Source: Octopus sinensis (Eukaryota). Taken from it: a DNA stretch of 64,000 nt. The DNA lies in the NCBI RefSeq assembly GCF_006345805.1, contig NC_043004.1, positions 56,482,001-56,546,000 of the forward strand, in the 5' to 3' direction. The translations under genes were made by a program, and so were the position numbers. Shown here one piece after another: positions 2,222 through 62,014 of this stretch. The notes beneath the pieces were generated by a model that ran no database searches, was not told the DNA's origin, and saw nothing but the letters and a program-made list of their open reading frames with translations. Numbering within the stretch: the stretch's first letter is position 1; every line of letters begins with the position of its first letter.

Positions 2222-2404
<183 letters not shown>

Positions 2405-4829: not shown

Positions 4830-4900
<71 letters not shown>

Positions 4901-13150: not shown

Positions 13151-13832
13151 TTATTGTTCTAATGGCCATGTTTCCGTACTTAAATACATCACACGGATTT
13201 AATTGAAGGATACTTTTCACAGCCGGATGACGTGAGCCATATTTTTCCACGACCTGTTTCCATAGAAGATTCGAGACTAGTGACAATTCCTGATCATAGC
13301 CGCTATAAACATTTACAAGAATTACACTATTTCAAGTTACGGCAGCACATACGCACATACATACTTATACATACAAACATCACACATTCGCACACATATA
13401 TCTTTTAGTTTCCATCTAACGAATTCACTCTCTTGTCTTTTGTCTCGTTTTTTATATACACACATGTACATAGGCATACGTGCATACTTGCATAAAAAAT
13501 TTTGGTAACTTGATTAAAATTGACCAGTATGAAAATAGAAGTCAGGATGACCATTACAAAATGATGATTCACTTAACCACCAGCACAATGTAGGTGTCGA
13601 CTATCTTTACTGTTTGATTTGACCGATTTTCTTGGACCAACAACTTTCAGCTGACTTATTTATTTCGGCATTTCTTCAACAACACGTGGATCATTTAAAA
13701 ACTATCCTGCATTGAAAACCCTAAATATAGCCCTTAATGAAACTTAAAATACACATTTGGAAAGTTACGAGGCACGAGTAAAAGACTGCAAAATCTCAGA
13801 ATCACTTACTCTTTCCAATTCGAGGAGTTTAG

Positions 13833-14403
13833 GGCGGTGAGCTGGCACAAACTTTAGCTGGCACAAACGGGCGAAATGCGAATCCGAGGTCGACTTTGCC
13901 TTTCATCCTTTCGGGGTCGATAAATTAAGTACCAGTTACGCACTGAGGTTGATGTAATCGACTTAAACCGTTTGTATGTCCTTGTTTGTCCCATCTGTGT
14001 GTAGCCCCTTGTGGGTAGTAAAGAAATAGGCATTTCTTCTGCCGCTACGTTCTGAGATCAAATTCCGCCGAAGTCAACTTTGCCTTTCATCCTTTCCGGG
14101 TCGATTAATTAAGTACCAGTTACGCACTGGAGTTGATGTAATCGACTAAATCCGTTTGTCTGTCCTTGTTTGTGCCCTCTGTGTGTAGCCCCTTGTGGGT
14201 AGTAAAGAAATAAGTATTTCATCTGTTTTTACGTTCTGAGTTCAAATTCCGCCGAGGTCGACTTTGCTTTTCATCCTTTCTGGGGTCGATTAAATAAGTA
14301 CCAGTAACGCACTGGGGTCGATGTAATCGACTTAATCCCTTTACTTATCCTTGTTTATCCCCTCTATGTTTAGCCCCTTATGAGCAATAAAGACATAAGA
14401 AAC
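13833..14403 (+). mobile_element. Family D (Meta-domain-like) SINE: one head plus three tandem ~183-bp body+tail units
   Basis: GCCTTTCATCCTTTCGGGGTCGATAAA..AAGTACCAG occurs three times. It resembles the MetaSINE central domain as I recall it. Confidence 0.85.
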
Positions 14404-18374: not shown

Positions 18375-18774
18375 GGTGGCGAGCTGGCAGAAACGTTAGC
18401 ACGCCGGGTGAAATGCGTAGTCGTATTTCGTCTGCCGCTACGTTCTGAGTTCAAATTCCGCCGAGGTCGACTTAACCTTTCATCCTTTCGGGGTCGATAA
18501 ATTAAGTATCAGTTACGCACTGGGGTCGACGTAATCGACGTAATCCGTTTGTCTGTACTTGTTTGTCCCCTCTATGTTTAGCCCCTTGCGGGTAGTAAAG
18601 AGGTAGGTATTTCGTCTGCCGTTACGTTCTGAGTTCAAATTCCGCCAAGGTCGACTTTGCCTTTCATCCTTTGGAGGTCGATAACTTAAGTACCATCTGC
18701 GTACTGGGGTAGATCTAATCGACTGGCTCTCTCCTTTAAAATTTCGGGCGTTGTACCTAGAGTAGAAAAGACTA
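18375..18774 (+). mobile_element. Family D SINE, dimeric form (Tx1-like tail, then a second body with a different tail)
   Basis: Head GGTGGCGAGCTGGCAGAAACGTTAG, B box GAGTTCAAATTCC twice, two Meta-like cores. Confidence 0.85.
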
Positions 18775-19278: not shown

Positions 19279-19378
19279 NNNNNNNNNNNNNNNNNNNNNN
19301 NNNNNNNNNNNNNNNNNNNNNNNNNNNNNNNNNNNNNNNNNNNNNNNNNNNNNNNNNNNNNNNNNNNNNNNNNNNNNN
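19279..19378. other. Assembly gap (100 N)
   Basis: Run of N. Confidence 1.
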
Positions 19379-20381: not shown

Positions 20382-20439
20382 GGCGCAGGAGTGGGTATGT
20401 AGGCACAGGAGTGGCTGTGTGGTAAGTAGCTTCTTACCA
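20382..20439 (+). mobile_element. 5' head of a SINE family A copy split by element 1
   Basis: GGCACAGGAGTGGCTGTGTGGTAAGTAGCTTCTTACCA, preceded by a 20-bp duplicated head start. Confidence 0.85.
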
Positions 20440-22583
20440 GACAGACGTGTTGTTTTTTGCTCCTGCAAATGTCACGTGTTTGAACGTGAAATGTTGAACT
20501 TTTGACTCGGCGACAGGTAAGACGTTCTGTATTTTTAGAAGCATAGTGAAGTTTATTGCTTGCTTAATGTTATTTAGCAGTTAACGTTATCTAGCATTAA
20601 TATTTTTTTGCGGGTAATAGACTTCACTTTACTTCAGATATATTTCAGATATATTGTGCTTTGTGAGGAGGCGTAGCCCCTCCGCAAAAATTAATTTGTT
20701 TGCTTGTGTTTTACTACTTCGCAAGAAAATTATAAAAATAAGCCACTATTGGATTACCTTTCGGACCCATTTTTGTGGCGGTTGTGTTGCAGTTGCGGCG
20801 TTCCAGGTTCAACCCAGGCCGGGAGTACCGCAAGGCCAGAATATTTTTGCTGTGTTTTTTCTGTTTATTAACTTTCTTTTGAACTTCATTTAACCCCCCC
20901 CCCCTTTTGTTTTTTTTCTTTATTGCGACTTTCCGTTAATTTCTTCCCTTCTGTCGTGCTTTCTCCTTTTTGGTTTTTTCAAAAATCAAATTTTATTTGA
21001 CTTTTGAACTTTTTCTTCCTGCTTTTGAGTTTAATTTGAATATATTTTAAAAAAAACATGGCAATGAAAAATAACAAAATTTTGGAGTGGGAAATCATAC
21101 CACCTAAAAAGTGGTTAAAAGACCGTGAAGATAGGAAGGTGGTGTTGAGAACCTACTCCAAGGCACTTGACACCATCGCCCTATTCGAAAAGACGCCAAT
21201 TGAAAAGGAGTTGGAAGAGTATTTGCCAACAATTAAATTCATTTCCAGGGGTGTCAAATATGCAACGGCGTTGTTGCTATTTGACACCCCTGAAGAGGCT
21301 TGCAAATTTGCTAGCAAACCCTTGGAGGGTAAGGAAATCGTATTCCTGCCCACGTACAAAAAAAAGAAATTGATGAAAGCTTGGATCTGCGGACTGCCAC
21401 CCGACATAGAATCCGAGTGGATAGAGGAGACTATCCGCCGGGATCTGGGTGACAGCGAAACTAAGCTCCTCAATGTAAAAGTTCTTCCTGCGGCTGCTTG
21501 GGTTGGATCAAAAGCAATTTTGACCCTGTGGACCCAATCAGCCAATCTGGTTCTTCCAGATTTTTTGAAAATGGCCGGGTGCAGGTACCCGGTGATGCTT
21601 GAGGGTCGCCCCCCTAAGTGTCATCGGTGCTTGGAGTCCGGCCACATAAAGAAGAACTGTCCTCGGGAACAAAATAGGATCCCGGAACAGTTAAGTAAAA
21701 CCCCTCTAGAAGAGGGAACGATAACGGCCGAGAAAGCAGAGGACTCCTCAAACAGAGGCGAAAGAGAAGGTGAGCAACAATGGGTGCTCACCAAAGGATA
21801 ATAGGATGAGGAGAGGAAGGCGAATCTTCCAGCCACGAGGAGACGCACCCTCCCTCAGTTGAAAAGGGAAAAAAAAGAAAAAGAGGAAGAAAAACGGGCT
21901 GTCAGTGTAGCACCGGAATGTCGCGGAACTACGTCGGTTGGGGTTGTGCCACCGACAAGAGAAGGAATACTGTTGGCGGAAACTGTGCCACCAACGAAAG
22001 AGCTGAATGTATTGGTCCTCTTCTATAGAGGAGGAGAAATTGAAAAGTGATGGAAGAGCACTACAAGGGAGCACCTTTAGCCTTCACACAGGACCCCGAA
22101 TGGCCTCCGCAGGTAGCTGTGGAGGCCGTGGCGTTCGACGTGACGCTAGGGCTAAAGGAGCTCAATGAAGATTATAACTTGGTCCCGGGCGACGCGAACT
22201 CGGAACTTGACTACGTTCTGAGGAGGCGTGGTTGATGGTGGAGGGCGCGGGCACAAGCTATTTCGAGGACGATATGTATTATTAGTAATGGACTTAAGTC
22301 CAAAAATTGAAAAATTGTAAGAGGATTAATACCTCGTTTTGTATTAATAATGGACTGCTAAGTCCAAAAATTGGAAAAATTGTAAGAGGTTTAATACCTC
22401 GTTTTGTGTTTATCTTTTTAAAAAAGAACAATGTTTTAGAGAAGCAAAAGTCGGCGGGCGCTTTCTGTCTTCTCCCATCCTTATCATCTTTCTTTCATTA
22501 TCATTCACCTCATTAATGTCCTCGTCCAGCCCGCAAAGCTAACTTAATCTGTGTACTGCCTTTATGGCAAATGTTTTGAAATA
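20440..22583 (+). mobile_element. Element 1: ORF1-only Tx1-type non-autonomous retrotransposon (~2.1 kb)
   Basis: Flanked by AAGTAGCTT.(C/T)(T/C)TACCA duplications (20424-20439 and 22584-22600). It has a 5' UTR, a gag-like ORF1, a short 3' UTR ending AAATAA, and no EN/RT sequence. Confidence 0.85.
21058..22235 (+). pseudogene. ORF1/gag-like protein with CX2CX4HX4C zinc knuckle, disrupted after codon 247
   Basis: LEGRPPKCHRCLESGHIKKNCP. The downstream pieces (21859-22050, 22047-22235) align by eye with the element 2 ORF1 C-terminus. Confidence 0.85.
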
Positions 22584-22978
22584 AAGTAGCTTGTCTACCA
22601 ACCACACTGTTCCAGGTTCAGTCCCACTGCGTCGCACCTTGGGCAAGTGTCTTCTACTATAGCCTCGGGCCGACCAAAGCCTTGTGAGTGGATTTGGTAG
22701 ACGGAAACTGAAAGAAGCCCGTCGTATATATGTATATATATATATATGCGCGTGTGTGTATTTGTGTGTCTGTGTTTGTTCCCTAGCATTGCTTGACAAC
22801 CGATGCTGGTGTGATTATGTCCCCGTTACTTAGCGGTTCGGCAAAAGAGATCGATAGAAAAAGTACTGGGCTTACAAAAAAATAAGTCCCGGGGTCGATT
22901 TGCTCGATTAATGGCGGTGCTCCAGCATGGCCGCAGTCAAATGACTGAAACAAGTAAAAGAGTAAAAGAGTAAAAGTG
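22584..22978 (+). mobile_element. Remainder of the SINE family A copy split by element 1
   Basis: Resumes AAGTAGCTTG..TACCAACCAC..GTTCCAGGTTCAGTCCC and ends (AAAGAGTA)n. Confidence 0.9.
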
Positions 22979-23311
22979 TATACATGCATACACAAGTCTA
23001 TTATACACCATTTTAAAATCGTGATTACCTATCTGTACGTTTGTAACTGTGTGTATGTGAGTATGTGTGCGTTTTTATGTGTGTCTGTGTGTGTCACATC
23101 CTCCCTAATTTTGTAAGATGTGCCCTGTTGCTGTCAAATATTGTAAAAATAAAATTACGTAAAATGTTCAAATTCGGTATTTCCCACTTAAAAGAAAAAT
23201 TGCAGAAATCTGTCCAGATGAAGGGGCCTATCTATTGGGAAAGATATGGTCAGACATGAAATAAGCAAAAGTTTACATAAGTCATGTTATTGTAAAAATT
23301 GCCCCTCAACG

Positions 23312-33657: not shown

Positions 33658-33695
33658 GGCGCAGGAGTGGCTGTGTGGTAAGTAGCTTTGCTAAC
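33658..33695 (+). mobile_element. 5' head of a SINE family A copy split by elements 2 and 3
   Basis: GGCGCAGGAGTGGCTGTGTGGTAAGTAGCTTTGCTAAC. Confidence 0.9.
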
Positions 33696-35687
33696 TGCGC
33701 ATGTGCGAGTCAGTGTTGTGTTTGCCACTGAAGCAGTGAAGATGTGCTTTTGAAGCCGTCTTGAATTGAAAACTTTGGAAGCCCCATGTAAGGTAAGATT
33801 CTGTTTTCTGGGTCCAGTGGGAGTTTTTGTTGAGAATTATTTTTTACATGCAGGAAGTCCTACTGGATTCAGAATTCTGATTCTGCCGACATGTGGCAAA
33901 TATATTTTTCTCGCTGAGAAAATTTTTTGGGGCGTATCCGTCTTCGAATTGTGAGAATTGCATTGTGCTGTGAAGAACTACCAATTTTACACCAATTCAT
34001 GTGGAAGTTGTGCGATCCTGGTTCGATTTAGGCCGGGAGTACCAAATGGCCAAAAGGATTTTGCTGTGTTTTTGACTTTCTTTTTAACTTTATTTGACTT
34101 TCTTTTCAACTTTATTTGACTCTCTCCTTTTTTCATTGTGACTTTCTTCGGATTTCCTTTTCTTCTCGTTTTTTAGTTTTATTCTAAATACATTAATTTA
34201 AAAAAAAAACAAAAAAACATGGCAACAAAAGAAACCACCGCTTTGGAATGGGAGGTCGTCCCACCCAAGCAGTGGATTGAAAGTCTTGAGAAGAGGACGG
34301 TGGTCCTACGAACCTATTCTAGGTCGCGTGGAGCCATTGCCCTCTTCGACAGGAATACTATAGAGAAAGAGTTGGGGGACTACCTGCCAACTATAAAATT
34401 TATTTCTCGGGGGACTAAATTTGCAACGGTGTGGTTGCTGTTTGGTACCCCCGAGGAAGCTAGCAGATTTGCTAGCGAGCCACTGGAGGGATATGAAATT
34501 TTGTTCCTCCCCTCGTATTGTGGCAGAAAAGTGAAAAGAGCCTGGGTGTGTGGGCTGCCCCCGGGCACGGAGGCGGAATGAATCGAGAAGACCATCCGGC
34601 GAGGCCTGGGGGATAGCGGGCCCAGACTGCTGAGTGTGAAGGTGGCTCCCGCGGTCGCCTGGGAGGGGTCGAGGGCAACTTTGACCCTGTGGACACCGGT
34701 AGCCGTGGGAGAAATGAAATTCACGGACTTCCTGAGAATGGCTGGGCACAGGTACCCGGTGATACTCGAGGGTCGCCCCCCCAAGTGTCACCTGTGCTTG
34801 AAGCCCGGACATATCAGGAAGAATTGTCCCAGAGGCCGTGGTGGTGCCCCGGAGCAGAGAGGGGAAAAGGCGCCCGCCGCCCCCTCATTGGAGGGGGAGA
34901 CGATGGAAGTCGTGGAGGAGGTTGCCTCCCCGAAAAGAAAGAGAAAGGCGAGCAACAATGGTTGCCCGCCAAAGAACGCTCAAAGGGGCGAAGGGGGATA
35001 GCAATCCCCCGTGTCTGGTGACGGAGTCCTCTGGGTCAGCAGTCTCCCCCAAAAGAAGGAGGAGAAAAAGGAGAGGTCGGACGACTGACGTTTCTGTGTC
35101 GCCGACGGAGCCGCGGGTGGGATGTGTGCCACCCGCGGACAAGGCTCCGCCAGTAGGAAGTGTGCCACTGACGGAGCAGTGTGAGGTCCCTCCCTGTGAA
35201 GAGGAGATGCTTCTCCTCCTTTACCACAAGGGAGGGGAGGTGGAAAGATTCTTGAATGGCTTGGGTGACCGAGAGCGTAAGGGCACGGTCGGCTCAAGTA
35301 GTCCGTTATGGCCTCCGCGGGTAGCTGCGGAAAAAGTAACAGAAGATACTTTGTCAAGGGTCGCAGAGACCTTTGAAAAGAAAGACTTTACTTTTCTCTT
35401 TGCAGGCCCCGACTTGTCGTCGCAGAGTTGTCTGCAGGCGGCAAGACAATTTGCTTCGGGGACCTGACAAGAAGAATTGTTGAACATTTGTTATGTAATT
35501 TGAATCATTGTGAACATTTTATTAAATGTATTTATTGAAACATTGTTTTAGAGAAGCGAAAGTCGGCGGGCGCTTTCGACTTCTCCCATCACCATCTTCA
35601 TCCACCACCACCATCATCCATTAATGTCCTTGTCCAGCCCGTAGCTACTACTCTGTGTGCTGCCCTAGTGGCAAATTATATAAAATA
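33696..35687 (+). mobile_element. Element 2: ORF1-only Tx1-type non-autonomous retrotransposon (~2.0 kb)
   Basis: Bounded by AAGTAGCTT(T)GCTAAC duplications (33680-33695, 35688-35703). ORF1 and both UTR motifs are homologous to element 1; no EN/RT sequence. Confidence 0.88.
34219..35467 (+). pseudogene. ORF1/gag-like CCHC protein with one nonsense codon (34579-34581) and one frameshift near 34990
   Basis: MATKETTALEWEVVPPK...LEGRPPKCHLCLKPGHIRKNCP; collinear with element 1 ORF1. Confidence 0.85.
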
Positions 35688-36093
35688 AAGTAGCTTGCTA
35701 ACCTCACTGACTGAAGAGTGACTTTGCTTACCGTACTACGGTTTGGACGCGTTTTCTTCCCGGTAAGAATTTTGCTGTGTTGTTAATTGTTGAATTTCTA
35801 CTACTGAAAATTTGTCTTTAAACGTTGCTGAACTGTCTTGTTCTCCGGTTTTACCGGGGAATAATTGGATAATTTCTTACCGTTGAACTGTTAGCCATTG
35901 TGGCTTTTTTATTTACGTGACTATATATAGTCCTGCCAGACTATTTTCGTGCCCCTCCCCCGAATGGGGGTGGGAATTGGAATTTTTGAACTGCTTTTTT
36001 GAACTACTTTGGAAGAAAAACTTTCTATAGGTTTCCCAGTTTTGTGGGAAACCAATACTCGTAATTTTTGTGTTGTCTAATTTCAACAGAATA

Positions 36094-37496
36094 ATGTCTG
36101 TTGAAATTATTCACGAAAGTAGTGCTCTTGAGGAGAGCAATGTTAAAAAGTTTTCTGAGGTAGCCGCAGTGGCTACCGAGAAAATTGACATCGATGTCAA
36201 CCAGCTCGTCGAGCTATTTAAAAGAATGCAAGAGGGGGTGGTGATGTTAAAATATCACCCTCCGCCAGTATCGTGGAGACCGAGAAGCGGACCGTAGTGT
36301 TTAAAACTTTCTGTCCACAAAGCAGAAGGTTCAAACACTTTGAAAAAAGTACCATCGAGAAATGCCTGTCCCCGATTTGGAAGGACATCGTGTACGTCGC
36401 CAGGGGACGGGCATATGGCACTGTGGATGTCCGCTTCTCAGGGGAAGAAGTGGCCCGCGGGCATTCTGTAAACCCCCTAAAAACCAAAGAGGTGGTACTT
36501 TTCCCAAGCTATAGGGGACGCAGGACGTCCCGGGTCAGGATTGTAGAAGCCCCGCCGGAAGTAGATCCGGTAGAGGTAGTGGCCGCCCTATTATATAAAA
36601 GGGCGGACAAAATAAAAATACTAGAAGTAACATGCTCTACCCCTCGATTTTGGCTCGGGCGTAACATTAATATATTAATTCAAGGAACAGCGGAGGACCT
36701 ACAGCTCCTTCCTGAGAGGGTGCTCGTGGGCGAGAACGTAGCCCTCAGGGTACAGGTCGAAGGCCGAAAACCCACCTGTTACGCCTGCGGCAAAAAGGGC
36801 CACATTCGTGTAGACTGTCCAGACAAGCAAAAGAAACCGCAGACACCAGGCCCCTCAGATAATAAAAAAGTCCCTACCCTTGCAAACACACCTACCCCTA
36901 CAAAAACAAAAAATCCCACTCCTGCTGTTAATGGGCCAACCCCAAAACAGACTGAAGAAAAAACCCAGCCCTCGCACTCACAAACCCCTACACTATTAAA
37001 ACCTCCCACCCCACTAAAAACTGCGGCGCCTACCGAACAAACTATTGCTACCCCAGACGATACCATGGAGGTATCAGAGGGGGGATTTACACCAGTTCGT
37101 AAAAGAATTCGTGCAGCATCCCCGTCCACATCCCCTACAAAAAATAATAAAAACAAAGACACACCACAGACACGAAAAAAAAAATCCCGCTCAACTGGCC
37201 CAGAAAAAGAAGACAAAAAAGAAAATGAACTCATATTAATTGAATTCGACACACAAGACAAATACTTAAACGATATTGTGGTTCAGCATCAGTCAGCAAG
37301 ACTGTACAACAAATACAAAGATCGAAATAGACACGCGTGGATTGCGGAAACAACGTTCAAACAATTAAAAGACAGACACCCAAACGCCATCCGGGATGTC
37401 GCGAACTTGCCGGACTATCTGAAGAAAGAGGAGAAAGAAGGGGCCCACAAACGTGTGGTGAGGTCGGCTCCCACCTCTCCAACGAAATGTAAGTAG
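36094..37496 (+). pseudogene. Element 3 ORF1 copy a (~467 aa if one homopolymer frameshift near 36235 is repaired)
   Basis: MSVEIIHESS...VEGRKPTCYACGKKGHIRVDCP...; has G5 where copy b has G6. Confidence 0.85.
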
Positions 37497-37513
37497 AACT
37501 TTTACTTTTTGTA

Positions 37514-38530
37514 ATGGCTTCGTTTAACCTTGGTTGTTTATCGGCGCCTAGAGGGCTTTCTCGTGACGTCGAAGACTTTAGTGATATTAGGGGACTTTAA
37601 TGCTATCGTTGACGTACACATCGATAGCCTTGGCTCGATCTATAGGAAAGTGAACTCACGTCTCGTGGATCTGCTTAAGCGGTTTCAGCTAGCAGATCGT
37701 TACAGACTTGACCATCCGAACGTCCCAGAGTGGACCTGGATGAGTGGCGACGGAAGGTTCAAGTCTTATCTAGACAGGATAGTGATAAGAACTAGAGATA
37801 AGTCTAGTTTTAGTTGTCCACAGCTCGTCCAGGTGCCCTATATTGACCATAGAATGGTCACGTGTAGACTGGACATAGATAGCACACTTAAGATAGGAAC
37901 CGGCTACTGGAAGCTGAACAAGTCTATTTTGACACGCGAGGCATACCGTAGCCGGATTAAGGTGTTAGTGCAGAGGGCGTTAACCGGAGCCGTGGTTAAT
38001 AACCGGTGGTGGTTCGCCCTCAAAAGAGCCATTCGATTCGAGTCCATTAGATTTAGTAAACAACTAAGACTAGATAGGGCTAGAATAGAAGGGCAACTAG
38101 TTAAGAACTTAGAGGAGGCGTTGAGGTTGGGCTCTGCATCTCACATTTTAGCGGCGAGAACGGCATTAGACCGTCACCTCAAAACCAAACATGAGGGATG
38201 TAGAGTTCGGGCTAAAGTACGAGCATTGGGCCGTGAGGGAATTAATGTTGCCGGATGGGCCCGTACGATAGAAACACAGCGTGGAAACGATGTCACAATT
38301 GGGTCTCTTGTTGATGAAAACGGATGCACGATCAAGAAGCGGAACGAGATGTGTGAGGCACTTCACAAGCACTTCGCCGAGTTGTTCGGGAGGTGCGGGA
38401 CGCTGGATCATGGTGAGGCCCTTAGGGACTTCCTGTCTGGTGGCCCGCGCCTCCCTACACGAGAGGCTGAGTGCTGTGAAGGGCCAATCACAGCCGAGGA
38501 AGTAATCGAGGTATTGGGCAAGTGCCCCGG
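37514..38530 (+). pseudogene. Element 3 ORF2 copy a, partial (start MASFNLGCL, internal deletion, ends at the duplication junction)
   Basis: Jumps at TTTA microhomology (37537-37540) to sequence matching 40525 onward. Confidence 0.85.
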
Positions 38531-38859
38531 TAAGAATTTTGCTGTGTTGTTAATTGTTGAATTTCTACTACTGAAAATTTGTCTTTAAACGTTGCTGAAC
38601 TGTCTTGTTCTCCGGTTTTACCGGGGAATAATTGGATAATTTCTTACCGTTGAACTGTTAGCCATTGTGGCTTTTTATTTACGTGACTATATATAGTCAT
38701 GCCAGACTATTTTCGTGCCCCTCCCCCGAATGGGGGTGGGAATTGGAATTTTTGAACTGCTTTTTTGAACTACTTTGGAAGAAAAACTTTCTATAGGTTT
38801 CCCAGTTTTGTGGGAAACCAATATTCGTAATTTTTGTGTTGTCTAATTTCAACAGAATA

Positions 38860-40200
38860 ATGTCTGTTGAAATTATTCACGAAAGTAGTGCTCTTGAGGA
38901 GAGCAATGTTAAAAAATTTTCTGAGGTAGCCGCAGTGGCTACCGAGAAAATTGACATCGATGTCAACCAGCTCGTCGAGCTATTTAAAAAAATGCAAGAG
39001 GGGGGTGGTGATGTTAAAATATCACCCTCCGCCAGTATCGTGGAGACCGAGAAGCGGACCGTAGTGTTTAAAACTTTCTGTCCACAAAGCAGAAGGTTCA
39101 AACACTTTGAAAAAAGTACCATCGAGAAATGCCTGTCCCCGATTTGGAAGGACATCGTGTACGTCGCCAGGGGACGGGCATATGGCACTGTGGATGTCCG
39201 CTTCTCAGGGGAAGAAGTGGCCCGCGGGCATTCTGTAAACCCCCTAAAAACCAAAGAGGTGGTACTTTTCCCAAGCTATAGGGGACGCAGGACGTCCCGG
39301 GTCAGGATTGTAGAAGCCCCGCCGGAAGTAGATCCGGTAGAGGTAGTGGCCGCCCTATTATATAAAAGGGCGGACAAAATAAAAATACTAGAAGTAACAT
39401 GCTCTACCCCTCGATTTTGGCTCGGGCGTAACATTAATATATTAATTCAAGGAACAGCGGAGGACCTACAGCTCCTTCCTGAGAGGGTGCTCGTGGGCGA
39501 GAACGTAGCCCTCAGGGTACAGGTCGAAGGCCGAAAACCCACCTGTTACGCCTGCGGCAAAAAGGGCCACATTCGTGTAGACTGTCCAGACAAGCAAAAG
39601 AAACCGCAGACACCAGGCCCCTCAGATAATAAAAAAGTCCCTACCCTTGCAAACACACCTACCCCTACAAAAACAAAAAATACCACTCCTGCTGTTACGG
39701 TGCCAACCCCAAAACAAACTGAAGAAAAAACCCAGCCCTCGCACTAACAAACCCCTACATTATTAAAACCTCCCACCCCCCTAAAAACTGCGGCGCCTAC
39801 CGAACAAACTATTGCTACCCCAGACGATACCATGGAGGTATCAGAGGGGGGATTTACACCAGTTCGTAAAAGAATTCGTGCAGCATCCCCGTCCACATCC
39901 CCTACAAAAAATAATAAAAACAAAGACACACCACAGACACGAAAAAAAAAATCCCGCTCAACTGGCCCAGAAAAAGAAGACAAAAAAAATGATGAACTCA
40001 TATTAATTGAATTCGACACACAAAACAAATACATAAACGATATTGTGGTTCAGCATCAGTCAGCAAGACTGTACAACAAATACAAAGATCGAAATTGACA
40101 CGCGTGGATTGCGGAAACAACGTTCAAACAATTAAAAGACAGACACCCAAACGCCATCCGGCATATCGCGAACTTGCCGCACTATCTGAAGAAAGAGGAG
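38860..40200 (+). pseudogene. Element 3 ORF1 copy b (nonsense at 39745-39747; C-terminus deleted)
   Basis: Near-identical to copy a; TCA to TAA change. Confidence 0.85.
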
Positions 40201-43200
40201 TTCGAAGTGGAAGCAGGCTTGTTTCCTCGAAGACCTCAGATCACATGATATACATGTGATGGTTGCTACAGAGACCAAGCTGGACAGCCTACAAACCTTC
40301 TCGCCTCTCCTGAATAGCTACGAGAAAATCATGTCTCCTGGCCAGACCGGAGGGCGAGGGGGCGTAGTGGTACTGATCCGTAAAGACTTGGCTCTGCAGA
40401 CAAGTACAGTCTATGTAGACCCAGAAGGTGGGCTGGTCGTCCTTGATGTGACATACAGCAGAAAGGCCTTCAGGTTGATCGGACTCTATGCACCTTGTGC
40501 TAGAGGTTTCCAAACTGATTTTTATCGGCGCCTAGAGGGCTTTCTCGTGACGTCGAAGACTTTAGTGATATTAGGGGACTTTAATGCTATCGTTGACGTA
40601 CACATCGATAGCGTTGGCTCGATCTATAGGAAAGTGAACTCACGTCTCGTGGATCTGCTTAAGCGGTTTCAGCTGGCAGATCGTTACAGACTTGACCCTC
40701 CGAACGTCCCAGAGTGGACCTGGATGAGTGGCGACGGAAGGTTCAAGTCTTATCTAGACAGGATAGTGATAAGAACTAGAGATAAGTCTAGTTTTAGTTG
40801 TCCACAGCTCGTCCAGGTGCCCTATACTGACCATAGAATGGTCACGTGTAGACTGGACATAGATAGCACACTTAAGATAGGAACCGGCTACTGGAAGCTG
40901 AACAAGTCTATTTTGACACGCGAGGCATACCGTAGCCGGATTAAGGTGTTAGTGCAGAGGGCGTTAACCGGAGCCGTGGTTAATAACCGGTGGTGGTTCG
41001 CCCTCAAAAGAGCCATTCGATTCGAGTCCATTAGATTTAGTAAACAACTAAGACTAGATAGGGCTAGAATAGAAGGGCAACTAGTTAAGAACTTAGAGGG
41101 AGCGTTGAGGTTGGGCTCTGCATCTCACATTTTAGCGGCGAGAACGGCATTAGACCGTCACCTCAAAACCAAACATGAGGGATGTAGAGTTCGGGCTAAA
41201 GTACGAGCATTGGGCCGTGAGGGAATTAATGTTGCCGGATGGGCCCGTACGATAGAAACACAGCGTGGAAACGATGCCACATTTGGGTCTCTTGTTGATG
41301 AAAACGGATGCACGATCAAGAAGCGGAACGAGATGTGTGAGGCACTTCACAAGCACTTCGCCGAGTTGTTCGGGAGGTGCGGGACGCTGGATCATGGTGA
41401 GGCCCTTAGGGACTTCCTGTCTGGTGGCCCGCGCCTCTCGACACGAGAGGCCTAGTGCTGTGAAGGGCCAATCACAGTAATCGAGGAAGTAATCGAGGTG
41501 TTGGGAAAGTGCCCCGGGGAGAAATCACCGGGTCTCGATGGTCTGCCCTATGAATTTTATAAAAGTATGCCAGACTTGTTCGGGCACCTACTGGCTAGCG
41601 TCTACGCCAACTGGCAGCAGAATGGGAGAATTTCCAAGTCTGAAGCCGGGGGGCGGTGACGTTGATCAGGAAGGACCCGAACAAGGGAACGAGATAGGGA
41701 ACTTCAGGCCCATAACTCTGTTGAACACAAAGTTAAAGATTCTGGCCAAGGTGCTAGCAAAAAGGTTGGCGCGGGTCGTGGACAAACTTGTCGGGGAAGC
41801 GCAAACGTGCGCTATCCCCGGCAGAACGATCTCCGACAATCTCCACCTTATACGCTACTCCTTAGAGAGGGTGGGGAAGCTTTCTGGCGCAGGGGGAGCA
41901 CTGGTACATTTAGACCAGTCCAAAGCATTTGATAGGGTCGACCATCGGTACTTGGCGGCGGTCCTCGGAGTGGCTGGCCTAGGCCCGACCTTTCGAGGTT
42001 GGATCGCTGCTTTGTATAGCGACATCGAGTCTGTAGTCAAGGTGAACGGTTCCTTTTCGAAGCCGTTCAGGATCGAGCGTTCAGTTCGTCAAGGGTGTCC
42101 CCTGTCCTCGTTCCTATACGTATTGGCTCTTGAGCCTTTGCTGCGGAAGTTGGAGGCACTAGGGGGCGCGCCGCATGATCTATGGTGTGGAAGAGGAGCT
42201 ACGGCGTATGCGGATGACACCTCCATCATCGTGGCAGACGAAGGCCAGCTTCCAGTGGTGGAAGAGGCCATCTAAAGCTACGAGGCGGTGGCAGGAGCAA
42301 AGGTTAACAAGGACAAGTCAGTCGGTTTGCAACTCGGCACCTGGAGGGGCAAGCCGATGCCGTCCAATAACGTCGTAGGGCGTTGGACGGAAGGTCCTGT
42401 TAAGCTGCTCGGAGTCTGGTTCGGGCCAGACCTCCAGATTGAGAAAAATTGGAGTGAGGTGGCCAACAAGGTGACCGCTCTAACCCAGACCTGGTCTGGG
42501 CGGGCGTTTTCCCTGCTAGGGAAGGCGGAGGTGGTGCAGATGTTTATAGCATCAGTAATCATCTACCGTCTGACCGTGGTGCCTTGCCCCGATTTGTGGC
42601 TGAACAAGTTGGAGGGAATCCTTTTCCGATTTTTGTGGAAAGGTGGAAAGCCACTTGTAAAGCGCTCTGTCTGCTGCCAGAAACCGCTAAAGGGTGGGCT
42701 TGGGATGCCTTGGCTGAGGATGCGAAAACTCGCGTTAAGGTTGAGGCACCTCTGGCTTTACCTGGATGGAGAGCAGGTGTGGTCACCGCACGTCCGGTTC
42801 TACCTTCCCCAGTTAACATCCCTAACGGACATCGGTGCATGGATCAAGCGGGGACCTAAACTGAGTGAATGGCATTTGGAGTGCCATCAGGCGCTCCAGC
42901 TACTATCTCGGGTGGGCAACGCCGGCCACAGGAGTTCCACCACGGATTTCTATAGCGGGTTAGTTGAGATTAAGTCCGAAGACGCCTTGGGGGAGACCCT
43001 GGGCTACGATGAAAATCAGTTGGTCAACCTGTTCCGGAGGACGTTCGGGCCGGGGTATCTGGATAATTACCAGAAATCCCTGGCCTGGCAGTGTTTCCGT
43101 GCGGCTTTACCTGTTCGCGACAAGCTGTCAAGGCACGGTAGTGCCGTCTCGCCGACATGCCCGCGATGTGAGCAGGATAGGGAGACCGTCTTGCACGCAT

Positions 43201-43559
43201 TCGTGGAGTGTCCGGAGTTATCGGGACTGATAGCTTTTGTTGAACAACTGTTGTCAGTGATGGGAAGTGTACAGCTATCAGCTGAGTCTATCATCGAGAT
43301 TGTGCCGCCCCCTTTCCTTAACAGGGAAAGAAAGGCTTGTTTTTTCTGTGTAGTAGCCATACTGAAAGAAACAGTATGGAAGACGCGTACGAAAGGTATA
43401 GTGACAGGCACCTTTGTCACCGGCCAGGGGTTGATTAACTTTTTTAGTTACCACCTCAGTAGCAAAATCAGGCTGGAGAAGAGGTGTCTGTCACGAAATA
43501 TGTTTGTGAAAAGATGGAAGCCTGTGGTGTGCAAGATGGGTATGTTTGGCACCAGGTAA
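40201..43559 (+). pseudogene. Element 3 ORF2 copy b: APE endonuclease-reverse transcriptase-zinc finger, disrupted
   Basis: ORFs 40256-41455, 41538-42275 and 42288-43559 are collinear; only the first ~15 codons are missing. Confidence 0.92.
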
Positions 43560-43787
43560 GAGTGACCGGATCAGAAAGTAAAGGTTCTACCCGGATGGCT
43601 GGGTGTCCGTCCTTCGACATGATCATTAATATTTTTAAACATTGTCTTCGTAAAATTCATTGTTTATAATCTTATCCGTAATTTCATTCGAAAATTGCAA
43701 CTGTGTTAAGCTACTTCACCCTTTATATTTGTCTGTCCTTATTTGTCCCCTCTTTGTAAATGCCTAAATGGCAAATTATATGAAATA

Positions 43788-44133
43788 AAGTAGCTTGCTA
43801 ACCAACCACATGGTTCCGGGTTCAGTCCCACTGCGTGGCATCTTGGGCAAGTGTCGACCAATGCCTTGTGAGTGGATTTGGTAGACGGAAACTGAAAGAA
43901 GCCTGTTGTATATATGTATATATATGTATATGTATGTATGTGTATGTGTTTGTGTGTCTGTGTTTGTACCCCTAGCATTTCTTGACAACCGATGCTGGTG
44001 TGTTTACGTCCCCGTCACTTAGCGGTTCGGCAAAAGAATAAGTCCCGCGGTCGATTTGCTCGACTAAAGGCGCTGCTCCAGCATGGCCGCAGTCAAATGT
44101 CCGAAACACATAAAAGAGTAAAGAGTAAAAGAG
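43788..44133 (+). mobile_element. Remainder of the SINE family A copy split by elements 2 and 3
   Basis: AAGTAGCTTGCTAACCAACCACATGGTTCCGGGTTCAGTCCC...(AAAGAGTA)n. Confidence 0.92.
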
Positions 44134-44198
44134 TATATCACAAGTCCTAGCTGCAATCTAACATCGTCTACCAGTCTCAATCTAAGAAGAATACACAC

Positions 44199-55782: not shown

Positions 55783-55819
<37 letters not shown>
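55783..55819. repeat. (CTAT)n microsatellite, 5' flank of element 4
   Basis: Seen directly. Confidence 0.95.
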
Positions 55820-56035
55820 ACAATGGACGGACGCTAGTCATATCGGCTCCAAGTAAGTTGGCCACTTTTACATGTTTAAAACTCCTTGTTGTCAAATATT
55901 TGTTTTAATCGTTGTGCAAATTCATTCACTAAAAAACCTGAGAATTATTCACGTAGAATTCCGCCCCTGTATGGGCGAAATTAAAAAAAAACTTTCAAAA
56001 TTTCGTGGGTTTTTTAGCCATTTTTCATTTTGAAA

Positions 56036-58045
56036 ATGGCAACTAGAAACCACGTGGCTAGCCCGCCAGTCATGCAGAACGGTAGCAAAACACTATTGCT
56101 ACCACTAGCTGCTAAACATCGCAGCGTGAACACCGCTGTCACCACCATCACCACCACCAACAACAACAACAACAAATCTAACGTCGCATTCACCATCGCC
56201 GCGACCAAAGACATTAACTTAGATTTTCCCCTCACTCCCCACACCACTTGTTGATGATAAAGGGACAGAGAAAGGGATTTCAAAAATGAATACAAACGAA
56301 AACATGAATGCCAGCACCACCACCATCACCACCAACAACAACAACAACGAAATTGGCACAAAGCCGCCTACCAAAGACAACACCGCCAACACCAACACCA
56401 CTACTACGACTACTCAAATGCTACATCCAAGCCTTCTGCTGCTAATACCGCCCACACCAACACCACTACCATGACTTCAATTAACACTGCCACAATAACA
56501 CTTCTACTGCCAAATTCAAAACGAATTTTGCGGACGTAACAAAACAAAAAAGAACAATTGTAACATTCACCACACAAGAGATAAACCGCACAAAGGCACT
56601 CTTCTCCAAAGAAGGAGACAAATTGCACCTTCATATTCCACAACACATCGTGGAAAACACGCAAAAAAAAACAATAATTTATAAAGTAATAAACAAAAAA
56701 ACAAGAAGAACAGAAAATGCACCGCAGGAAAAAATCGATAAATGCCTTCGTCCTGTATGGGACTCCAAGGAATATATCAGTTGGGGAAACAAATTTGGTA
56801 CAGTCCAAGTACGTTTCCTCAACGAAAGTTTAGCAAAACGTTTTTCCACATTGGAGCTACATTCGGACGACTTGGTAATGATACCAGTCTATTTAAACAA
56901 AAGGGTCACGAAAGTCCAAAAAAAAAACATACCATTTGATGTCGAAACACAATGGGTGGTCTCTGCCATCTGCTTTGAAATGTCAGAGACAATGTCAGAG
57001 ACAAACATCCTGGAAATCGCGGTTCTAGGAGAGAAAGACTATGTGGGCAAATCAATCGAATTCCTGCTTCAATTGGATGAAGCAGCAAGAGAGAAGATAC
57101 CCACCGCTATAGAACTGCCAGGAGGCTACACAAACTCTATATAGTGGTAGAGGCAGGCGACCACGCTGCTATTTGTGTGGAAGCGAAACACACTTGAAAA
57201 AGACGTGCCCAACCACTGCACACCAAGAGCAACAACAACAACCACTACCACAACCAAAGCACTCCGGAAAAAAAAAAAGCTCTATACCCACACCACCATC
57301 AACACAGAAGACGACAAGAGAAGCACACCAAGCTAATCCGTCATCAACCAAAAACCACTCGACACCTGGAAAAATACCAACACTACCATCAACAGCAAAA
57401 CCCAAAGGAACAGAAAAACAAAGAAAACACACACAAACTGATCCCCATCCCTTATACCGCACTCAATCACACACACAAAACTCAACAACCAACAACAACG
57501 AAAACAACAACACAACCACTTACACAGACATACATAGAAGCCCACAACATACCCCTACCCCCTTCTGATTCCTCAGAAATTTCGTCGGAAGACGAAACCA
57601 GTGAGGAATGGCAAATAGCTACAAAAAGAAGGAAAATAAAGAGCAGAAACACAACCAAACCAAATGCAAACACGAACAAAGCAGGGGGAAATACATCTCC
57701 CGAAGACATTTCAAAACCCAACGCAAACAACAGCCACCCACCACACAAAAAACATATACAGCAAACATGCTCACAGCCATAGACACCAAAAACACAAATT
57801 TGATGGAATACATCCAATCAAAAACAAACATAACAGAAGATGACATAAAAACAAACAACCACCCATACACAACACCACCAGACCACATCAAAATAATACA
57901 CATCTCCAAAAGTCTGCACCACACACTCAAAGGCATTTTCCCCAGTGCGGTTGGTAAATGCCAAAAATATCTCACAAAGAAACTGTACTGGGATCTTCTC
58001 GAGGACAAACCAACGGAGGAGAAAGCAAAAACTTTCGAGCAGTAA
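56036..58045 (+). pseudogene. Element 4 ORF1 (low-complexity Thr/Asn N-terminus, RRM-like region, CYLCGSETHLKKTC knuckle), frameshifted
   Basis: Read on the plus strand from ATGGCAACTAGAAAC. The fragment KKTIIYKV...GNKFGTVQVRF parallels element 3 KRTVVFKT...GRAYGTVDVRF. Confidence 0.8.
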
Positions 58046-58076
58046 GTAACCCTCTGTATTCTAATTCATTAGAACT

Positions 58077-61000: not shown

Positions 61001-61507
61001 CAGAGATCCCTGGCCTGGCAGTGCTACCGAGAAGCGCTACCCGTTCGGGATAAGCTCTACAGACACGGCTCGAGAAACAGGGGCCGACCTGCCCGAGATG
61101 CGGTCAGAGCGACGAACCGTTCTGCACGCACTCGTTCAGTGTCCAACAATTTCCGACCTTTGGCTTATGTCGAACAACTGCTGTCACGTGTGGGACGAGT
61201 CGGTTTATCAGCTGAGTCTATCGTCAATATTGTCACGCCTCCTTCCTTCAAACGGGAAGGAAGAGCTATTTTCATCATCCTTGTGGCTATGGCGAAAGAA
61301 TGTATCTGGTGGACGCGTCTGAAAGGATTGGAGACAAACACTTTCCTCTCTGGTCAATCTCTCATCAACTTCTTCAAGTACCACTTGAAAAGGAAAGTGA
61401 GAGTAGAGAGGCAAGTTTTGTCTAGCGAATGTTTTAAAAAAAGATGGGTGAATGTAGCAAGAATGGCACGTATGAATGACGAAGCCACCTTGAGCATAGT
61501 CCTATGA
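58077..61507 (+). pseudogene. Element 4 ORF2: APE endonuclease-RT-zinc finger, frameshifted
   Basis: MIKIGCVNARG, GDWN, SYLDRI, TDH, DQSKAFDRV, SVRQGCPLS, YADD. Confidence 0.92.
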
Positions 61508-61912
61508 ACCCAGAAATCGAAAACAGAGAGTTGCTTATTTGCAAAAAAAAAAAAAAAAAAAAGAAATATAAAATGTGACTTCATTGACCGAGGTTACCGT
61601 GGTCTTTTCCGCAGGCTTTTCTTTCCACGGGTAAACCTCACCTGTCCTCCCCTTTACACTTCATATTGACATTTCTGTGATAACGATCCCTATTGATCAT
61701 TTTTTTTCCTCCCCCCCCCTTTTTTTTTTTTTTTTTTTAACCCCCCTTATTTTTGTCCTCTTTCTCTCCTTTTACGATCCCTTTTGATCGAACCTCCCCT
61801 TCCTTCTTTTTTTTTTTTTTTTTTTTTTTTTAATACCTTCAAAAGAAAAGAAAAGCTCTACCTTGTAATTTGTTCTATCTGTGTGCAGCCCTGTGTGGCT
61901 AATAAAGAAACA

Positions 61913-61925: not shown

Positions 61926-62012
<87 letters not shown>
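61913..62012. repeat. (TATC)n microsatellite between elements 4 and 5
   Basis: Seen directly. Confidence 0.95.

Positions 62013-62014
<2 letters not shown>

What the first reader, a model, noticed from the sequence alone, without database searches (positions are those of the whole stretch)
14155..14210. Meta-like SINE carries a Tx1-derived 3' tail
Seen: SINE D tail 14155-14180 TTTGTCTGTCCTTGTTTGTGCCCTCT matches the element 3 3' UTR 43728-43753 at 24/26 (18548-18573 also matches 24/26). The next part, 14178-14210, matches the element 4 end 61878-61910 at 28/33. Known: SINE tails usually derive from the partner LINE, mostly CR1/L2/RTE types, and L1-clade partners generally use poly(A) instead. 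Inference: this SINE subfamily is mobilised by a Tx1-clade LINE, adding a third tier (LINE, ORF1-only element, SINE) to the same machinery.
Basis: partly seen in the sequence, partly recalled or inferred. Interest (0 to 1): 0.75.

Follow-up and report, generated by a model that had tools for sequence, protein, structure and literature searches.

The report
Octopus SINE with Tx1-like LINE tail
A short parasitic repeat (SINE) in this octopus-type genome ends in about 60 bases copied from the 3' end of an L1/Tx1-type LINE family, so it very probably hitch-hikes on that LINE's enzymes; this is a new example of a well-known trick, with a partner type for which I found no reported case.

Summary
The matches are real: 24/26, 24/26 and 28/33. 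They exceed chance: the SINE tail scores 45 against each LINE end, and the best of 4,952 control windows scores 33.

The matched segment is the 3'-terminal module of an L1-superclade LINE group: TGTCCTTGT..CCC..TCTGTGT, a GCC/GGC hairpin, then AATAAAGAAAT. It sits at the 3' end of four LINE-type elements in the window and three LINE copies in Argonauta hians. It also ends bona fide Argonauta SINEs that carry 13-17-bp target-site duplications.

LINE-to-SINE tail capture is therefore well supported, and so are the three tiers (LINE, ORF1-only element, SINE).

Caveats:
- "Tx1" rests on domain architecture, a CCHC-containing ORF1, target-specific insertion and literature. No RT phylogeny was possible.
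- Neither element 3 nor element 4 is the exact partner.
- "Meta-like" is unverified; the core is probably Deu/Nin-type.
- The SINE units in the window lie in tandem arrays. I think self-targeted insertion made them, but this is unproven.

Side finding: the element-3 family and both ORF1-only elements sit at one precise site in the head of another SINE, and element 4 sits in a (TATC)n microsatellite.

The parts
13832..14399 (+). Tandem array of three 'SINE D' units (period about 184 bp). Unit 1 has a head with an internal deletion. Units 2 and 3 start at SINE position 47-49. Every unit ends in tail A.
   Evidence: TRF 13884-14399, 2.8 copies, 87% matches
13968..14030 (+). Tail A of unit 1 (LINE-derived 3' module)
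14152..14212 (+). Tail A of unit 2, the segment named in the finding (14155-14210)
14337..14398 (+). Tail A of unit 3 (more diverged, ends AATAAAGACATAA)
18375..18606 (+). Full-length SINE D: tRNA-like head with B box, conserved core, and tail A at 18545-18604
18607..18772 (+). SINE D positions 47-163 with a different tail ('tail B'), directly after tail A. Read as the resident copy that received the tail-A unit.
38526..43790 (+). LINE element 3: ORF1 with a CCHC knuckle, APE, RT, zf-RVT. The reading frame is broken. It lacks the first 56 nt present in element 2.
43725..43790 (+).
35704..38527 (+). LINE element 2: 98-99% identical to element 3, 3'-truncated, joined head-to-tail to element 3
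55820..61912 (+). LINE element 4 (about 66% nt identity to element 3), flanked on both sides by (TATC)n
61850..61912 (+). 3'-terminal module of element 4 (..TCTGTGTGCAGCCCTGTGTGGCTAATAAAGAAACA), co-terminal with the SINE tail
62010..64000 (+). Element 5: a 5'-truncated copy 99% identical to element 4, inserted in the same (TATC)n array. It runs off the window.
20439..22586 (+). ORF1-only element A. Its ORF is 28% identical to element 3 ORF1. It ends in the same module (22520-22586).
33696..35690 (+). ORF1-only element B. Its 3' module is at 35622-35690.
43791..44137 (+). Rest of the interrupted target SINE ('SINE2'). Its head is at 33656-33695. The 13-bp TSD TAGCTTGCTAACC occurs at 33683-33695 (as TAGCTTTGCTAAC), 35691-35703 and 43791-43803.
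22587..22982 (+). Rest of the second interrupted SINE2 (head at 20400-20438), with TSD TAGCTTCTTACC / TAGCTTGTCTACC
55783..55819 (+). (CTAT)9 upstream flank of element 4. The downstream (TATC)25 is at 61913-62013.

Best explanation
One subfamily of a tRNA-derived octopod SINE has swapped its original tail for about 60 nt copied from the 3' end of an L1-superclade, Tx1-like LINE lineage. The tail reads TGTCCTTGTTTGTCCCCTCTGTGT, then a 4-bp GCC/GGC hairpin with a CTTGT loop, then (A)ATAAAGAAAT, with no poly(A). The same module ends the autonomous LINEs and their ORF1-only derivatives.

Proposed mechanism (inferred). The LINE ORF2 protein recognises this terminal module on RNA ('stringent' recognition). 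It nicks a preferred target: CTAT/YATTT-type sequences, (TATC)n for element 4, and one exact site in a SINE head for element 3. It then primes reverse transcription directly on the tail, leaving 13-17-bp target-site duplications. SINE RNA and ORF1-only RNA carrying the module are copied in trans.

The actual donor and partner is probably another, older family of this LINE group, not element 3 or element 4 themselves.

The tandem arrangement in the window is best read as tail-A SINE RNA inserted into a YATTTCGTC site at position 47 of a resident SINE D head. The 5' end would be joined through the 13-nt homology, which gives seamless tandem units. I put about 50% on this last step.

Shown: tail homology, conservation of the module in the LINE group across two genera, SINEs with TSDs ending in the module, and target specificity of the LINEs. 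Inferred: trans-mobilisation, hairpin recognition, Tx1 clade, and the origin of the arrays.
For: 1. The matches are exact and above chance.

2. MAFFT aligns the tails of four SINE units with the 3' ends of elements 3 and 4 and ORF1-only elements A and B as one module.

3. Elements 3 and 4 are only about 66% identical in nucleotides, yet both end in the module. The ORF1 of A and B is only 28% identical to element 3 ORF1, yet they end in it too. The module is therefore ancestral to the group, not a capture by one copy.

4. Argonauta hians LINEs are 56-68% identical in protein. They end in ..TTCTGTGTCGGCCCTTGTGGCTAATAAAGAAAT and ..GTCCCCTCTATGTTTTTGCCCTTGTGGCTAATAAAAGAAATAA. The second shares an exact 15-mer, GTCCCCTCTATGTTT, with the window's SINE tail.

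5. Argonauta holds 7 copies in 27 kb of a SINE of about 235 bp with the same conserved core and this tail. They have perfect or near-perfect 13-17-bp TSDs, for example CTATTTCAAGGAA. A second SINE of about 155 bp is a tRNA-like head joined directly to the tail.

6. Other SINE D copies in the window carry a different tail, which gives the polarity of the tail swap.

7. AATAAA is kept in 6 of 7 LINE-type ends. It has decayed to AGTAAA, AATAGA or AACAGA in most SINE ends. This is expected if the signal matters only for Pol II LINE transcripts.

8. The hairpin: 86.7% of cells pair, against 72.9% in shuffles (0 of 500 shuffles reach the observed value). Two of four pairs show changes on both sides (GC/CG; GU/UA/GC).

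9. LINE identity: APE, RVT_1, zf-RVT and a CCHC ORF1. The RT is closest to human LINE-1 ORF2p (E 6e-41) against R2 (1e-20).

10. Target specificity: three insertions at one site in SINE2 heads with a 13-bp TSD, and element 4 flanked by (TATC)n on both sides.

11. Literature: L1-Tx1 is the L1-group class reported in octopus and molluscs, and a type I CCHC ORF1 fits Tx1.

12. Argonauta SINEs form dimers and trimers that sandwich a TSD, as described for Tx1-mobilised SINEU.
Against: - No reference Tx1 or L1 sequences were available, so clade assignment lacks a phylogeny.
- No database name gave a clade.
- In the window the tail-A units occur only at two loci, both arrays, and their TSDs are weak. 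A genuine terminal position with a clean TSD is shown only in Argonauta.
- Neither LINE in the window matches the whole tail well (27/30 for one half, 39/47 for the other).
- The LINE copies are young (98-99% identical) while the SINE units are about 87% identical, so the partnership with these particular families is not contemporaneous.
- The hairpin is only 4 bp. I derived it from these same sequences, which inflates the controls.
- Only 64 kb plus 27 kb were examined, so a better match to a non-Tx1 LINE elsewhere in the genome cannot be excluded.
Confidence: 0.75

Rival explanations
1. The similarity is chance, or reflects T/G-rich low-complexity sequence.
For: Block 1 (TTTGTCTGTCCTTGTTTGTCCCC) is T/G-rich. 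The best control windows (scores 28-33) are TG-rich stretches inside SINE2, such as TGTGTGTCTGTGTTTGTCCCC.
Against: Both LINE ends score 45, against a control maximum of 33. The element 4 alignment is co-terminal. The same module recurs at 7 LINE-type ends and more than 12 SINE ends in two genera.
Confidence: 0.02
2. The direction is reversed: individual LINE copies captured SINE sequence at their 3' ends.
For: Template switching can add SINE sequence to LINE copies. Only one 3' end per LINE family is visible in the window.
Against: The module lies at the exact terminus of four diverged LINE-type lineages in the window and three LINE copies in Argonauta, including a 3'-UTR-only truncated copy. 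SINE D relatives without it carry another tail. AATAAA is intact in the LINEs and decayed in the SINEs.
Confidence: 0.04
3. In this genome tail A is only an internal linker of a SINE-derived tandem or satellite repeat, or of a multimeric master copy. The repeat would have spread by unequal crossing-over, so the tail is not used for retrotransposition here.
For: Both loci in the window are arrays with the same tail-to-position-47 junction. TSDs at the array borders are weak. Within-array identity (87%) equals between-locus identity.
Against: The second locus joins a tail-A unit to a tail-B unit. Duplication of one unit cannot produce that, but an insertion into a resident tail-B SINE can. The junction sequence GYATTTCGTC resembles the target starts seen in Argonauta (CTATTTCAAGG, TATTTGTCC, CATTTTGTCC). 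Argonauta SINEs with this tail form arrays by repeated insertion, sandwiching TSDs. This rival would also not change the LINE origin of the tail.
Confidence: 0.2
4. The tail is shared with, and the SINE mobilised by, a LINE of another clade (CR1, RTE, L2 or Dong-R4) that lies outside the window and carries a similar 3' module.
For: Octopus genomes hold abundant RTE, CR1 and Dong-R4 LINEs. Only a tiny sample of the genome was seen.
Against: Every LINE end found with the module belongs to the same L1-type group. No other place in the window matches the tail.
Confidence: 0.06

Closest known systems
SINEU families mobilised by Tx1-Mar LINEs in crocodilians (Kojima 2015, PMC4494074)
   Same: Non-autonomous SINEs attributed to Tx1-clade LINEs. 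SINE and LINE share a target preference. Tandem SINE copies sandwich a TSD. The same is seen here for the LINE and ORF1-only elements in the SINE2 head, and for Argonauta SINEs.
   Different: SINEU has snRNA-derived heads and poly(A) tails, and no 3' sequence shared with the LINE. Here the head is tRNA-like, there is no poly(A), and about 60 nt of the tail are shared with the LINE.
Stringent-type SINE/LINE pairs with a common 3' tail, e.g. UnaSINE1/UnaL2 (Kajikawa and Okada 2002) and the 58 pairs listed by Ohshima (PMC3747384)
   Same: The SINE 3' end is copied from the partner LINE 3' end. There is a short conserved stem-loop near the terminus and variable tails within one SINE superfamily.
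   Different: The listed partners are mostly CR1, L2 and RTE. Tx1 does not appear in that table. The end here is AATAAAGAAAT rather than a short tandem repeat.
Stringent L1-clade pairs in plants and algae: maize/sorghum SINEs with monocot L1, and Chlamydomonas SINEX-3_CR with L1-1_CR (Ohshima 2012/2013)
   Same: An L1-superclade LINE with a conserved 3' end and hairpin that it shares with SINEs.
   Different: The hosts are plants and algae, the elements end in poly(A), and they are not target-specific.
Target-specific Tx1-clade LINEs: Tx1L in Tx1D, Keno in U2, Kibi and Koshi in (TC)n and (TTC)n, crocodilian Tx1 in (TTCC)n, DNA transposons and LTR elements
   Same: Precise insertion into a repeated sequence or a microsatellite. 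Element 4 sits in (TATC)n, and the element 3 family sits at one site in a repeat.
   Different: The target of the element 3 family is the tRNA-derived head of a SINE, and the microsatellite unit is TATC. Neither is in the target lists I could read.
MetaSINE superfamily (Nishihara et al. 2016, PMC4824008)
   Same: A tRNA head, a conserved central domain and interchangeable LINE-derived tails. The partner LINEs of MetaSINEs are still unknown.
   Different: Octopus is not among the described hosts. The Meta domain could not be compared here. Octopus SINEs are classed as tRNA-Deu and tRNA-Core in the literature.

Membership tests
SINE/LINE pair sharing a 3' tail (stringent type) | The 3'-terminal region of the SINE is homologous and co-terminal with the 3' end of a LINE | tested here: met
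   39/47 co-terminal with element 4, 27/30 with element 3, control maximum far lower. In Argonauta the SINE tail aligns to the LINE tail over about 60 nt.
SINE/LINE pair sharing a 3' tail (stringent type) | The tail is a conserved feature of the LINE family, not of single copies | tested here: met
   Seven LINE-type ends from four diverged lineages and two genera carry it.
SINE/LINE pair sharing a 3' tail (stringent type) | SINE copies end at the tail and are flanked by target-site duplications | tested here: met
   Met in Argonauta hians with 13-17-bp TSDs at four copies. In the window itself this is inconclusive, because both loci are arrays and their TSDs are weak.
SINE/LINE pair sharing a 3' tail (stringent type) | The SINE has an internal Pol III promoter (tRNA-derived head with A and B boxes) | tested here: inconclusive
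   A B-box-like GAGTTCAAATTCC / GTGTTCGAATC is visible. ARAGORN calls no tRNA in the window. The short Argonauta SINE has a clearly tRNA-like head.
SINE/LINE pair sharing a 3' tail (stringent type) | The LINE protein mobilises the SINE through the tail | not testable with these tools
   This needs a retrotransposition assay.
Tx1 clade of non-LTR retrotransposons | The RT domain groups with Tx1 references in a phylogeny (RTclass1/Repbase) | not testable with these tools
   No Tx1 reference sequence could be obtained, and database names gave no clade. Only L1-superclade affinity is shown: human L1 ORF2p at E 6e-41 against R2 at 1e-20.
Tx1 clade of non-LTR retrotransposons | ORF2 with an APE endonuclease, RT and a C-terminal CCHC; ORF1 of type I (RRM/CCHC) | tested here: met
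   Pfam Exo_endo_phos, RVT_1 and zf-RVT in ORF2, and zf-CCHC in ORF1. Type I ORF1 is stated to fit Tx1. No RRM was detected by Pfam.
Tx1 clade of non-LTR retrotransposons | Target-sequence-specific insertion (typical of the clade but not universal) | tested here: met
   Three independent insertions at GGTAAG|TAGCTTGCTAACC in two SINE2 copies, with a 13-bp TSD. Element 4 is flanked by (TATC)n on both sides, followed by a second copy in the same array.
MetaSINE superfamily | The 66-bp Meta domain directly after the tRNA-derived head | not testable with these tools
   No Meta-domain sequence was available (figures are not held). Octopus is not listed as a host. The literature classes octopus SINEs as tRNA-Deu and tRNA-Core. 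From memory only, the core ..TTTCGGGGTCGATAAAATAAGTACCAGT.. looks like the Deu/Nin domain.

The most novel reading that the evidence does not exclude
Octopod Tx1-like LINEs use stringent recognition of a hairpin plus AAUAAAGAAAU terminus and have no poly(A). Through this tail they drive several SINE families: the conserved-core SINE, a minimal tRNA-plus-tail SINE, and ORF1-only elements. Their endonucleases have evolved to use SINEs themselves as landing sites. One family hits a single position in the head of the abundant 400-bp SINE. The tail-A SINE re-inserts into the head of its own family, building seamless tandem arrays that could seed satellite-like repeats. This would link the octopus-specific SINE expansion to Tx1-type LINEs rather than to the RTE or CR1 LINEs usually assumed.
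Probability: 0.35. Interest if true: 0.65.

Novelty: new member of a known kind. Interest (0 to 1): 0.5.

Why it matters
SINEs make up roughly a tenth of the O. vulgaris genome and are the largest repeat class in octopus genomes, and their expansion is considered octopus-specific. No partner LINE has been reported for them in the papers I could read.

A shared 60-nt tail gives a concrete, testable partner: L1/Tx1-type LINEs. It also extends sequence-specific ('stringent') 3'-end recognition to the animal Tx1 branch of the L1 superclade. In that superclade, poly(A)-based 'relaxed' recognition is usually taken as the rule.

The linked target specificity offers an explanation for clustered and tandem SINE copies in these genomes. 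The targets seen are a SINE head, (TATC)n, and CTAT/YATTT starts.

The general principle, a SINE borrowing a LINE tail, is textbook. The advance is therefore incremental.

Tried and rejected
1. I first thought the 3' end of element 3 extended through the SINE2-like sequence to 44137. Both it and ORF1-only element A are followed by SINE2 starting at the same base. I rejected this when the missing SINE2 heads turned up directly upstream of the ORF1-only elements, with a 13-bp TSD. These are insertions into SINE2.

2. Two protein searches and a cluster look-up aimed at a clade label returned no Tx1 or L1 names.

3. A search for printed Deu or Meta domain sequences in papers returned only primer coincidences. 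The MetaSINE paper has no supplement held as text.

4. Two DNA pattern scans of metagenome contigs for the tail gave 0 hits and then 84 chance hits, with no upstream module.

5. The contig of the closest element 4 relative (L003) stops before the 3' end.

6. The 3' end of a distant relative (L088, about 41-52% identical in protein) could not be interpreted.

7. ARAGORN found no tRNA genes in the window.

8. I tested whether the 36-nt deletion in the first array unit marks a truncated insertion at the proposed target. Its left edge lies 5-6 nt from the junction and does not fit a 13-bp TSD, so it gives no support either way.

9. The control for the Argonauta tail alignment was contaminated by further SINE copies. 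Those copies became evidence themselves.

Full report
OBSERVATION

- 14155-14180 vs 43728-43753: 24/26.
- 18548-18573 vs 43728-43753: 24/26.
- 14178-14210 vs 61878-61910: 28/33.

A Smith-Waterman comparison of the whole tail (14150-14210) with the last 100 nt of each LINE-type element extends them. Against element 3 it gives 27/30. Against element 4 it gives 39/47 plus one 3-nt gap, running to the last base of both sequences. Each alignment scores 45. The same tail scored against 4,952 control windows of 100 nt, on both strands of the window, gave a mean of 12.9, a 99.9th percentile of 31 and a maximum of 33. The top controls are TG-rich stretches inside another SINE. BLAST of a full SINE copy finds only 43728-43757 outside SINE copies.

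WHAT THE ELEMENTS ARE

The window is very SINE-rich and looks octopod. The nearest database relatives of its LINE proteins come from Argonauta hians.

'SINE D' has three parts:
- A tRNA-like head with a B box.
- A conserved core (..TTTGCCTTTCATCCTTTCGGGGTCGATAAATTAAGTACCAGT..GGGGTCGATGTAATCGAC).
- A tail.

Most copies in the window carry a tail of the type ..CTTGTGCCAAAATTTGAAA ('tail B': 14776, 16078, 10532, 28144, 47264, 18607). Only two loci carry 'tail A', CCGTTTGTCTGTCCTTGTTTGTCCCCTCTGTGTGTAGCCCCTTGTGGGTAGTAAAGAAATA. One is a three-unit tandem array at 13832-14399 (period 184, 87% identity). The other is 18375-18606, which is followed directly by positions 47-163 of a tail-B copy.

The LINEs map as follows:
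- Element 2 (35704-38527) joined to element 3 (38526-43790). The two are 98-99% identical.
- Element 4 (55820-61912), followed by a 5'-truncated copy 99% identical to it, element 5 (62010 onward).

Elements 3 and 4 are only about 66% identical in nucleotides. Both encode an ORF1 with a CCHC knuckle and an ORF2 with an APE endonuclease, RT and the C-terminal zf-RVT domain. The RT is far closer to human LINE-1 ORF2p (E 6e-41 over residues 47-524) than to R2 (1e-20).

Two ORF1-only elements are also present: A at 20439-22586 and B at 33696-35690. They are 63% identical to each other in protein and 28% identical to element 3 ORF1 (E about 1e-21).

THE SHARED 3' MODULE

MAFFT aligns the four SINE tails with the 3' ends of element 3, element 4, A and B as one module. 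It consists of T(G/A)TGTCCTTGT..CCC, then (C/A)TCTGTGT, then a short inverted repeat (xGCC..loop..GGCy), then AATAAAG(AAAT).

Lineages as far apart as elements 3 and 4 and the ORF1-only elements all end in this module. It is therefore a property of the LINE group, not something one copy picked up.

I fetched two Argonauta hians loci that encode relatives (P0003 and P0009). Their LINE 3' UTRs end in:
- ..TTCTGTGTCAGCCAGGTGGCTAAGAAAGAAAT
- ..TTCTGTGTCGGCCCTTGTGGCTAATAAAGAAAT (a 3'-UTR-only truncated copy)
- ..GTCCCCTCTATGTTTTTGCCCTTGTGGCTAATAAAAGAAATAA

. The last shares the exact 15-mer GTCCCCTCTATGTTT with the window's SINE tail.

The same 27 kb of Argonauta contain seven copies of a SINE of about 235 bp with the same core and this tail. 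They have perfect or near-perfect TSDs of 13-17 bp: CTATTTCAAGGAA, TATATTRCATGAYATCC, TTTTAMCGATAAA. There is also a SINE of about 155 bp that is a tRNA-like head fused directly to the tail. This is what shows that the module works as the true 3' terminus of retroposed SINEs.

On a 15-sequence alignment, the 4-bp stem is paired in 86.7% of cells, against 72.9% after shuffling (0 of 500 shuffles reach the observed value). Two pairs show changes on both sides (GC/CG; GU/UA/GC). This evidence is modest, because I derived the structure from these same sequences.

AATAAA is intact in 6 of 7 LINE-type ends. It has decayed in most SINE ends to AGTAAA, AATAGA or AACAGA. That fits a Pol II signal needed only by the LINEs, and a LINE-to-SINE direction of transfer.

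TARGET SPECIFICITY, WHICH BEARS ON 'Tx1'

I first suspected that element 3 extended into the following SINE2 sequence. Instead, the missing SINE2 heads lie directly upstream of the ORF1-only elements. The junctions read as follows:
- Intact SINE2: ..GTGGTAAGTAGCTTGCTAACCAACCAC..
- A: ..GGTAAGTAGCTTCTTACC|element|..AATAAAG|TAGCTTGTCTACCAACCAC..
- B plus elements 2 and 3: ..GGTAAGTAGCTTTGCTAAC|B..AATAAAG|TAGCTTGCTAACC|element 2-element 3..AATAAAG|TAGCTTGCTAACCAACCAC..

So three insertion events used one position in two SINE2 copies, each with a 13-bp TSD. Four other SINE2 heads in the window are empty.

Element 4 lies between (CTAT)9 and (TATC)25, and element 5 follows in the same microsatellite. 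Downstream flanks in Argonauta almost always begin with CTAT or YATTT.

Target-specific insertion into repeats and microsatellites is the hallmark of the Tx1 clade. L1-Tx1 is the L1-group class reported in octopus and other molluscs. A type I CCHC ORF1 fits Tx1. I could not obtain Tx1 reference sequences, so clade membership stays inferred, at about 0.75.

HOW IT MOST LIKELY WORKS

The LINE ORF2 protein recognises the terminal module on its own RNA. It also recognises it, in trans, on ORF1-only and SINE RNAs. It nicks a preferred target and primes directly on the tail, without poly(A), leaving 13-17-bp TSDs. The tail homology, the TSDs and the target patterns are shown. Recognition and trans-mobilisation are inferred by analogy with experimentally studied stringent pairs.

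The donor is probably not element 3 or element 4. The match is mosaic, and the SINE units are about 13% diverged while the LINE copies differ by only 1-2%.

THE ARRAYS

In all three internal junctions, tail A is followed by SINE D position 47-49 (G(C/T)ATTTCGTCTGCC).

The second locus joins a tail-A unit to a tail-B unit. Simple duplication of one unit cannot produce that. The junction also resembles Argonauta target starts (CTATTTCAAGG, TATTTGTCC).

Argonauta SINEs with this tail form dimers and trimers that sandwich a TSD, as described for Tx1-mobilised SINEU.

I therefore favour, at about 50%, insertion of tail-A SINE RNA into that site of a resident SINE D. The second strand would be primed through the 13-nt homology, which would give seamless tandem units. 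Unequal crossing-over or a multimeric master copy remains a live alternative.

COMPARISON WITH WHAT IS KNOWN

SINEs sharing LINE tails are textbook. Ohshima's list of 58 pairs is dominated by CR1, RTE and L2, and Tx1 does not appear in it. Stringent L1-clade pairs are known in maize, sorghum and Chlamydomonas. SINEs mobilised by Tx1 are known (crocodilian SINEU with Tx1-Mar), but those have poly(A) tails and no shared tail. The partners of MetaSINEs are unknown, and octopus is not a listed host.

The 'Meta-like' label could not be tested. The literature classes octopus SINEs mainly as tRNA-Deu and tRNA-Core.

VERDICT

Its core, a tail derived from a Tx1-like LINE group and three tiers sharing it, is well supported. 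The clade, the exact partner and the SINE superfamily label are not established.
- This is a new member of a known kind.
- Interest is about 0.5. The linked finding of SINE-head-specific and (TATC)n-specific LINEs, and the possible self-targeting arrays, add value if confirmed genome-wide.

Noticed in passing
window 20400-22982 and 33656-44137: The element 3 LINE family and both ORF1-only elements are inserted at exactly one position (GGTAAG|TAGCTTGCTAACC) in the tRNA-derived head of the abundant 400-bp SINE ('SINE2'), each with a 13-bp TSD. That is three events in two SINE2 copies, two of them stacked at the same site. Four other SINE2 heads in the window are empty. A SINE head as a specific LINE target was not in the target lists I could read.
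   Followed up: yes
window 55783-62013: LINE element 4 is flanked by (CTAT)9 and (TATC)25. A second, 5'-truncated copy 99% identical to it follows in the same microsatellite. This looks like microsatellite-specific insertion of the Kibi/Koshi type, with a TATC unit. Three other (TATC)n arrays in the window (2224-2363, 46755-46994 and part of 45965-46138) are unoccupied.
   Followed up: partly
window 35704-43790: Elements 2 and 3 form a head-to-tail '1.5-mer'. Element 2 is cut off inside ORF2 at 38527, exactly where element 3 begins, 56 nt short of the full 5' end. One TSD pair flanks the whole. This suggests one retrotransposition event with a template switch between two RNAs. Element 2 also lacks the segment 40200-40521 of element 3.
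   Followed up: partly
window 20790-20860 and 34010-34070: The 5' UTRs of both ORF1-only elements contain a tRNA-3'-end-like motif (GGTTCGATTTAGGCCGGGAGTACC / GGTTCAACCCAGGCCGGGAGTACC) followed by TTTTGCTGTGTT. The latter is also at the 5' end of elements 2 and 3. GGTAAGA motifs resembling splice donors lie further upstream. No explanation.
   Followed up: no
L002 905-1355; L001 10819-11304: In Argonauta hians, a minimal SINE of about 155 bp (tRNA-like head joined directly to the LINE tail) occurs as three tandem copies separated by (C/T)ATTT(T)GTCC. The 235-bp SINE occurs as a dimer sandwiching CTATAGGCCAGCAC. This indicates repeated insertion at one site.
   Followed up: partly
protein P0004 / P0176: A protein deposited as 'MAG: zinc-binding domain-containing protein [Herbaspirillum sp.]' on a 1,775-bp contig is 55% identical to the C-terminal part of this cephalopod-type LINE ORF2. 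It is almost certainly animal LINE DNA mis-binned into a bacterial MAG.
   Followed up: no
window 43940-43975, 4900-4950, 54200-54310: The internal TG-rich segment of SINE2 (TGTGTGTCTGTGTTTGTCCCCCTAGC) resembles block 1 of the LINE tail (TTTGTCTGTCCTTGTTTGTCCCC). It gave the highest control scores (28-33). This may be only low complexity.
   Followed up: no
window 19279-19378: A run of 100 N (an assembly gap) lies between the second SINE D locus and the first interrupted SINE2.
   Followed up: no
window 61690-61830: The 3' UTR of element 4 contains long homopolymer and low-complexity runs (T8CCTC9T20.., T26) shortly before the conserved terminal module. Element 3 has nothing comparable.
   Followed up: no
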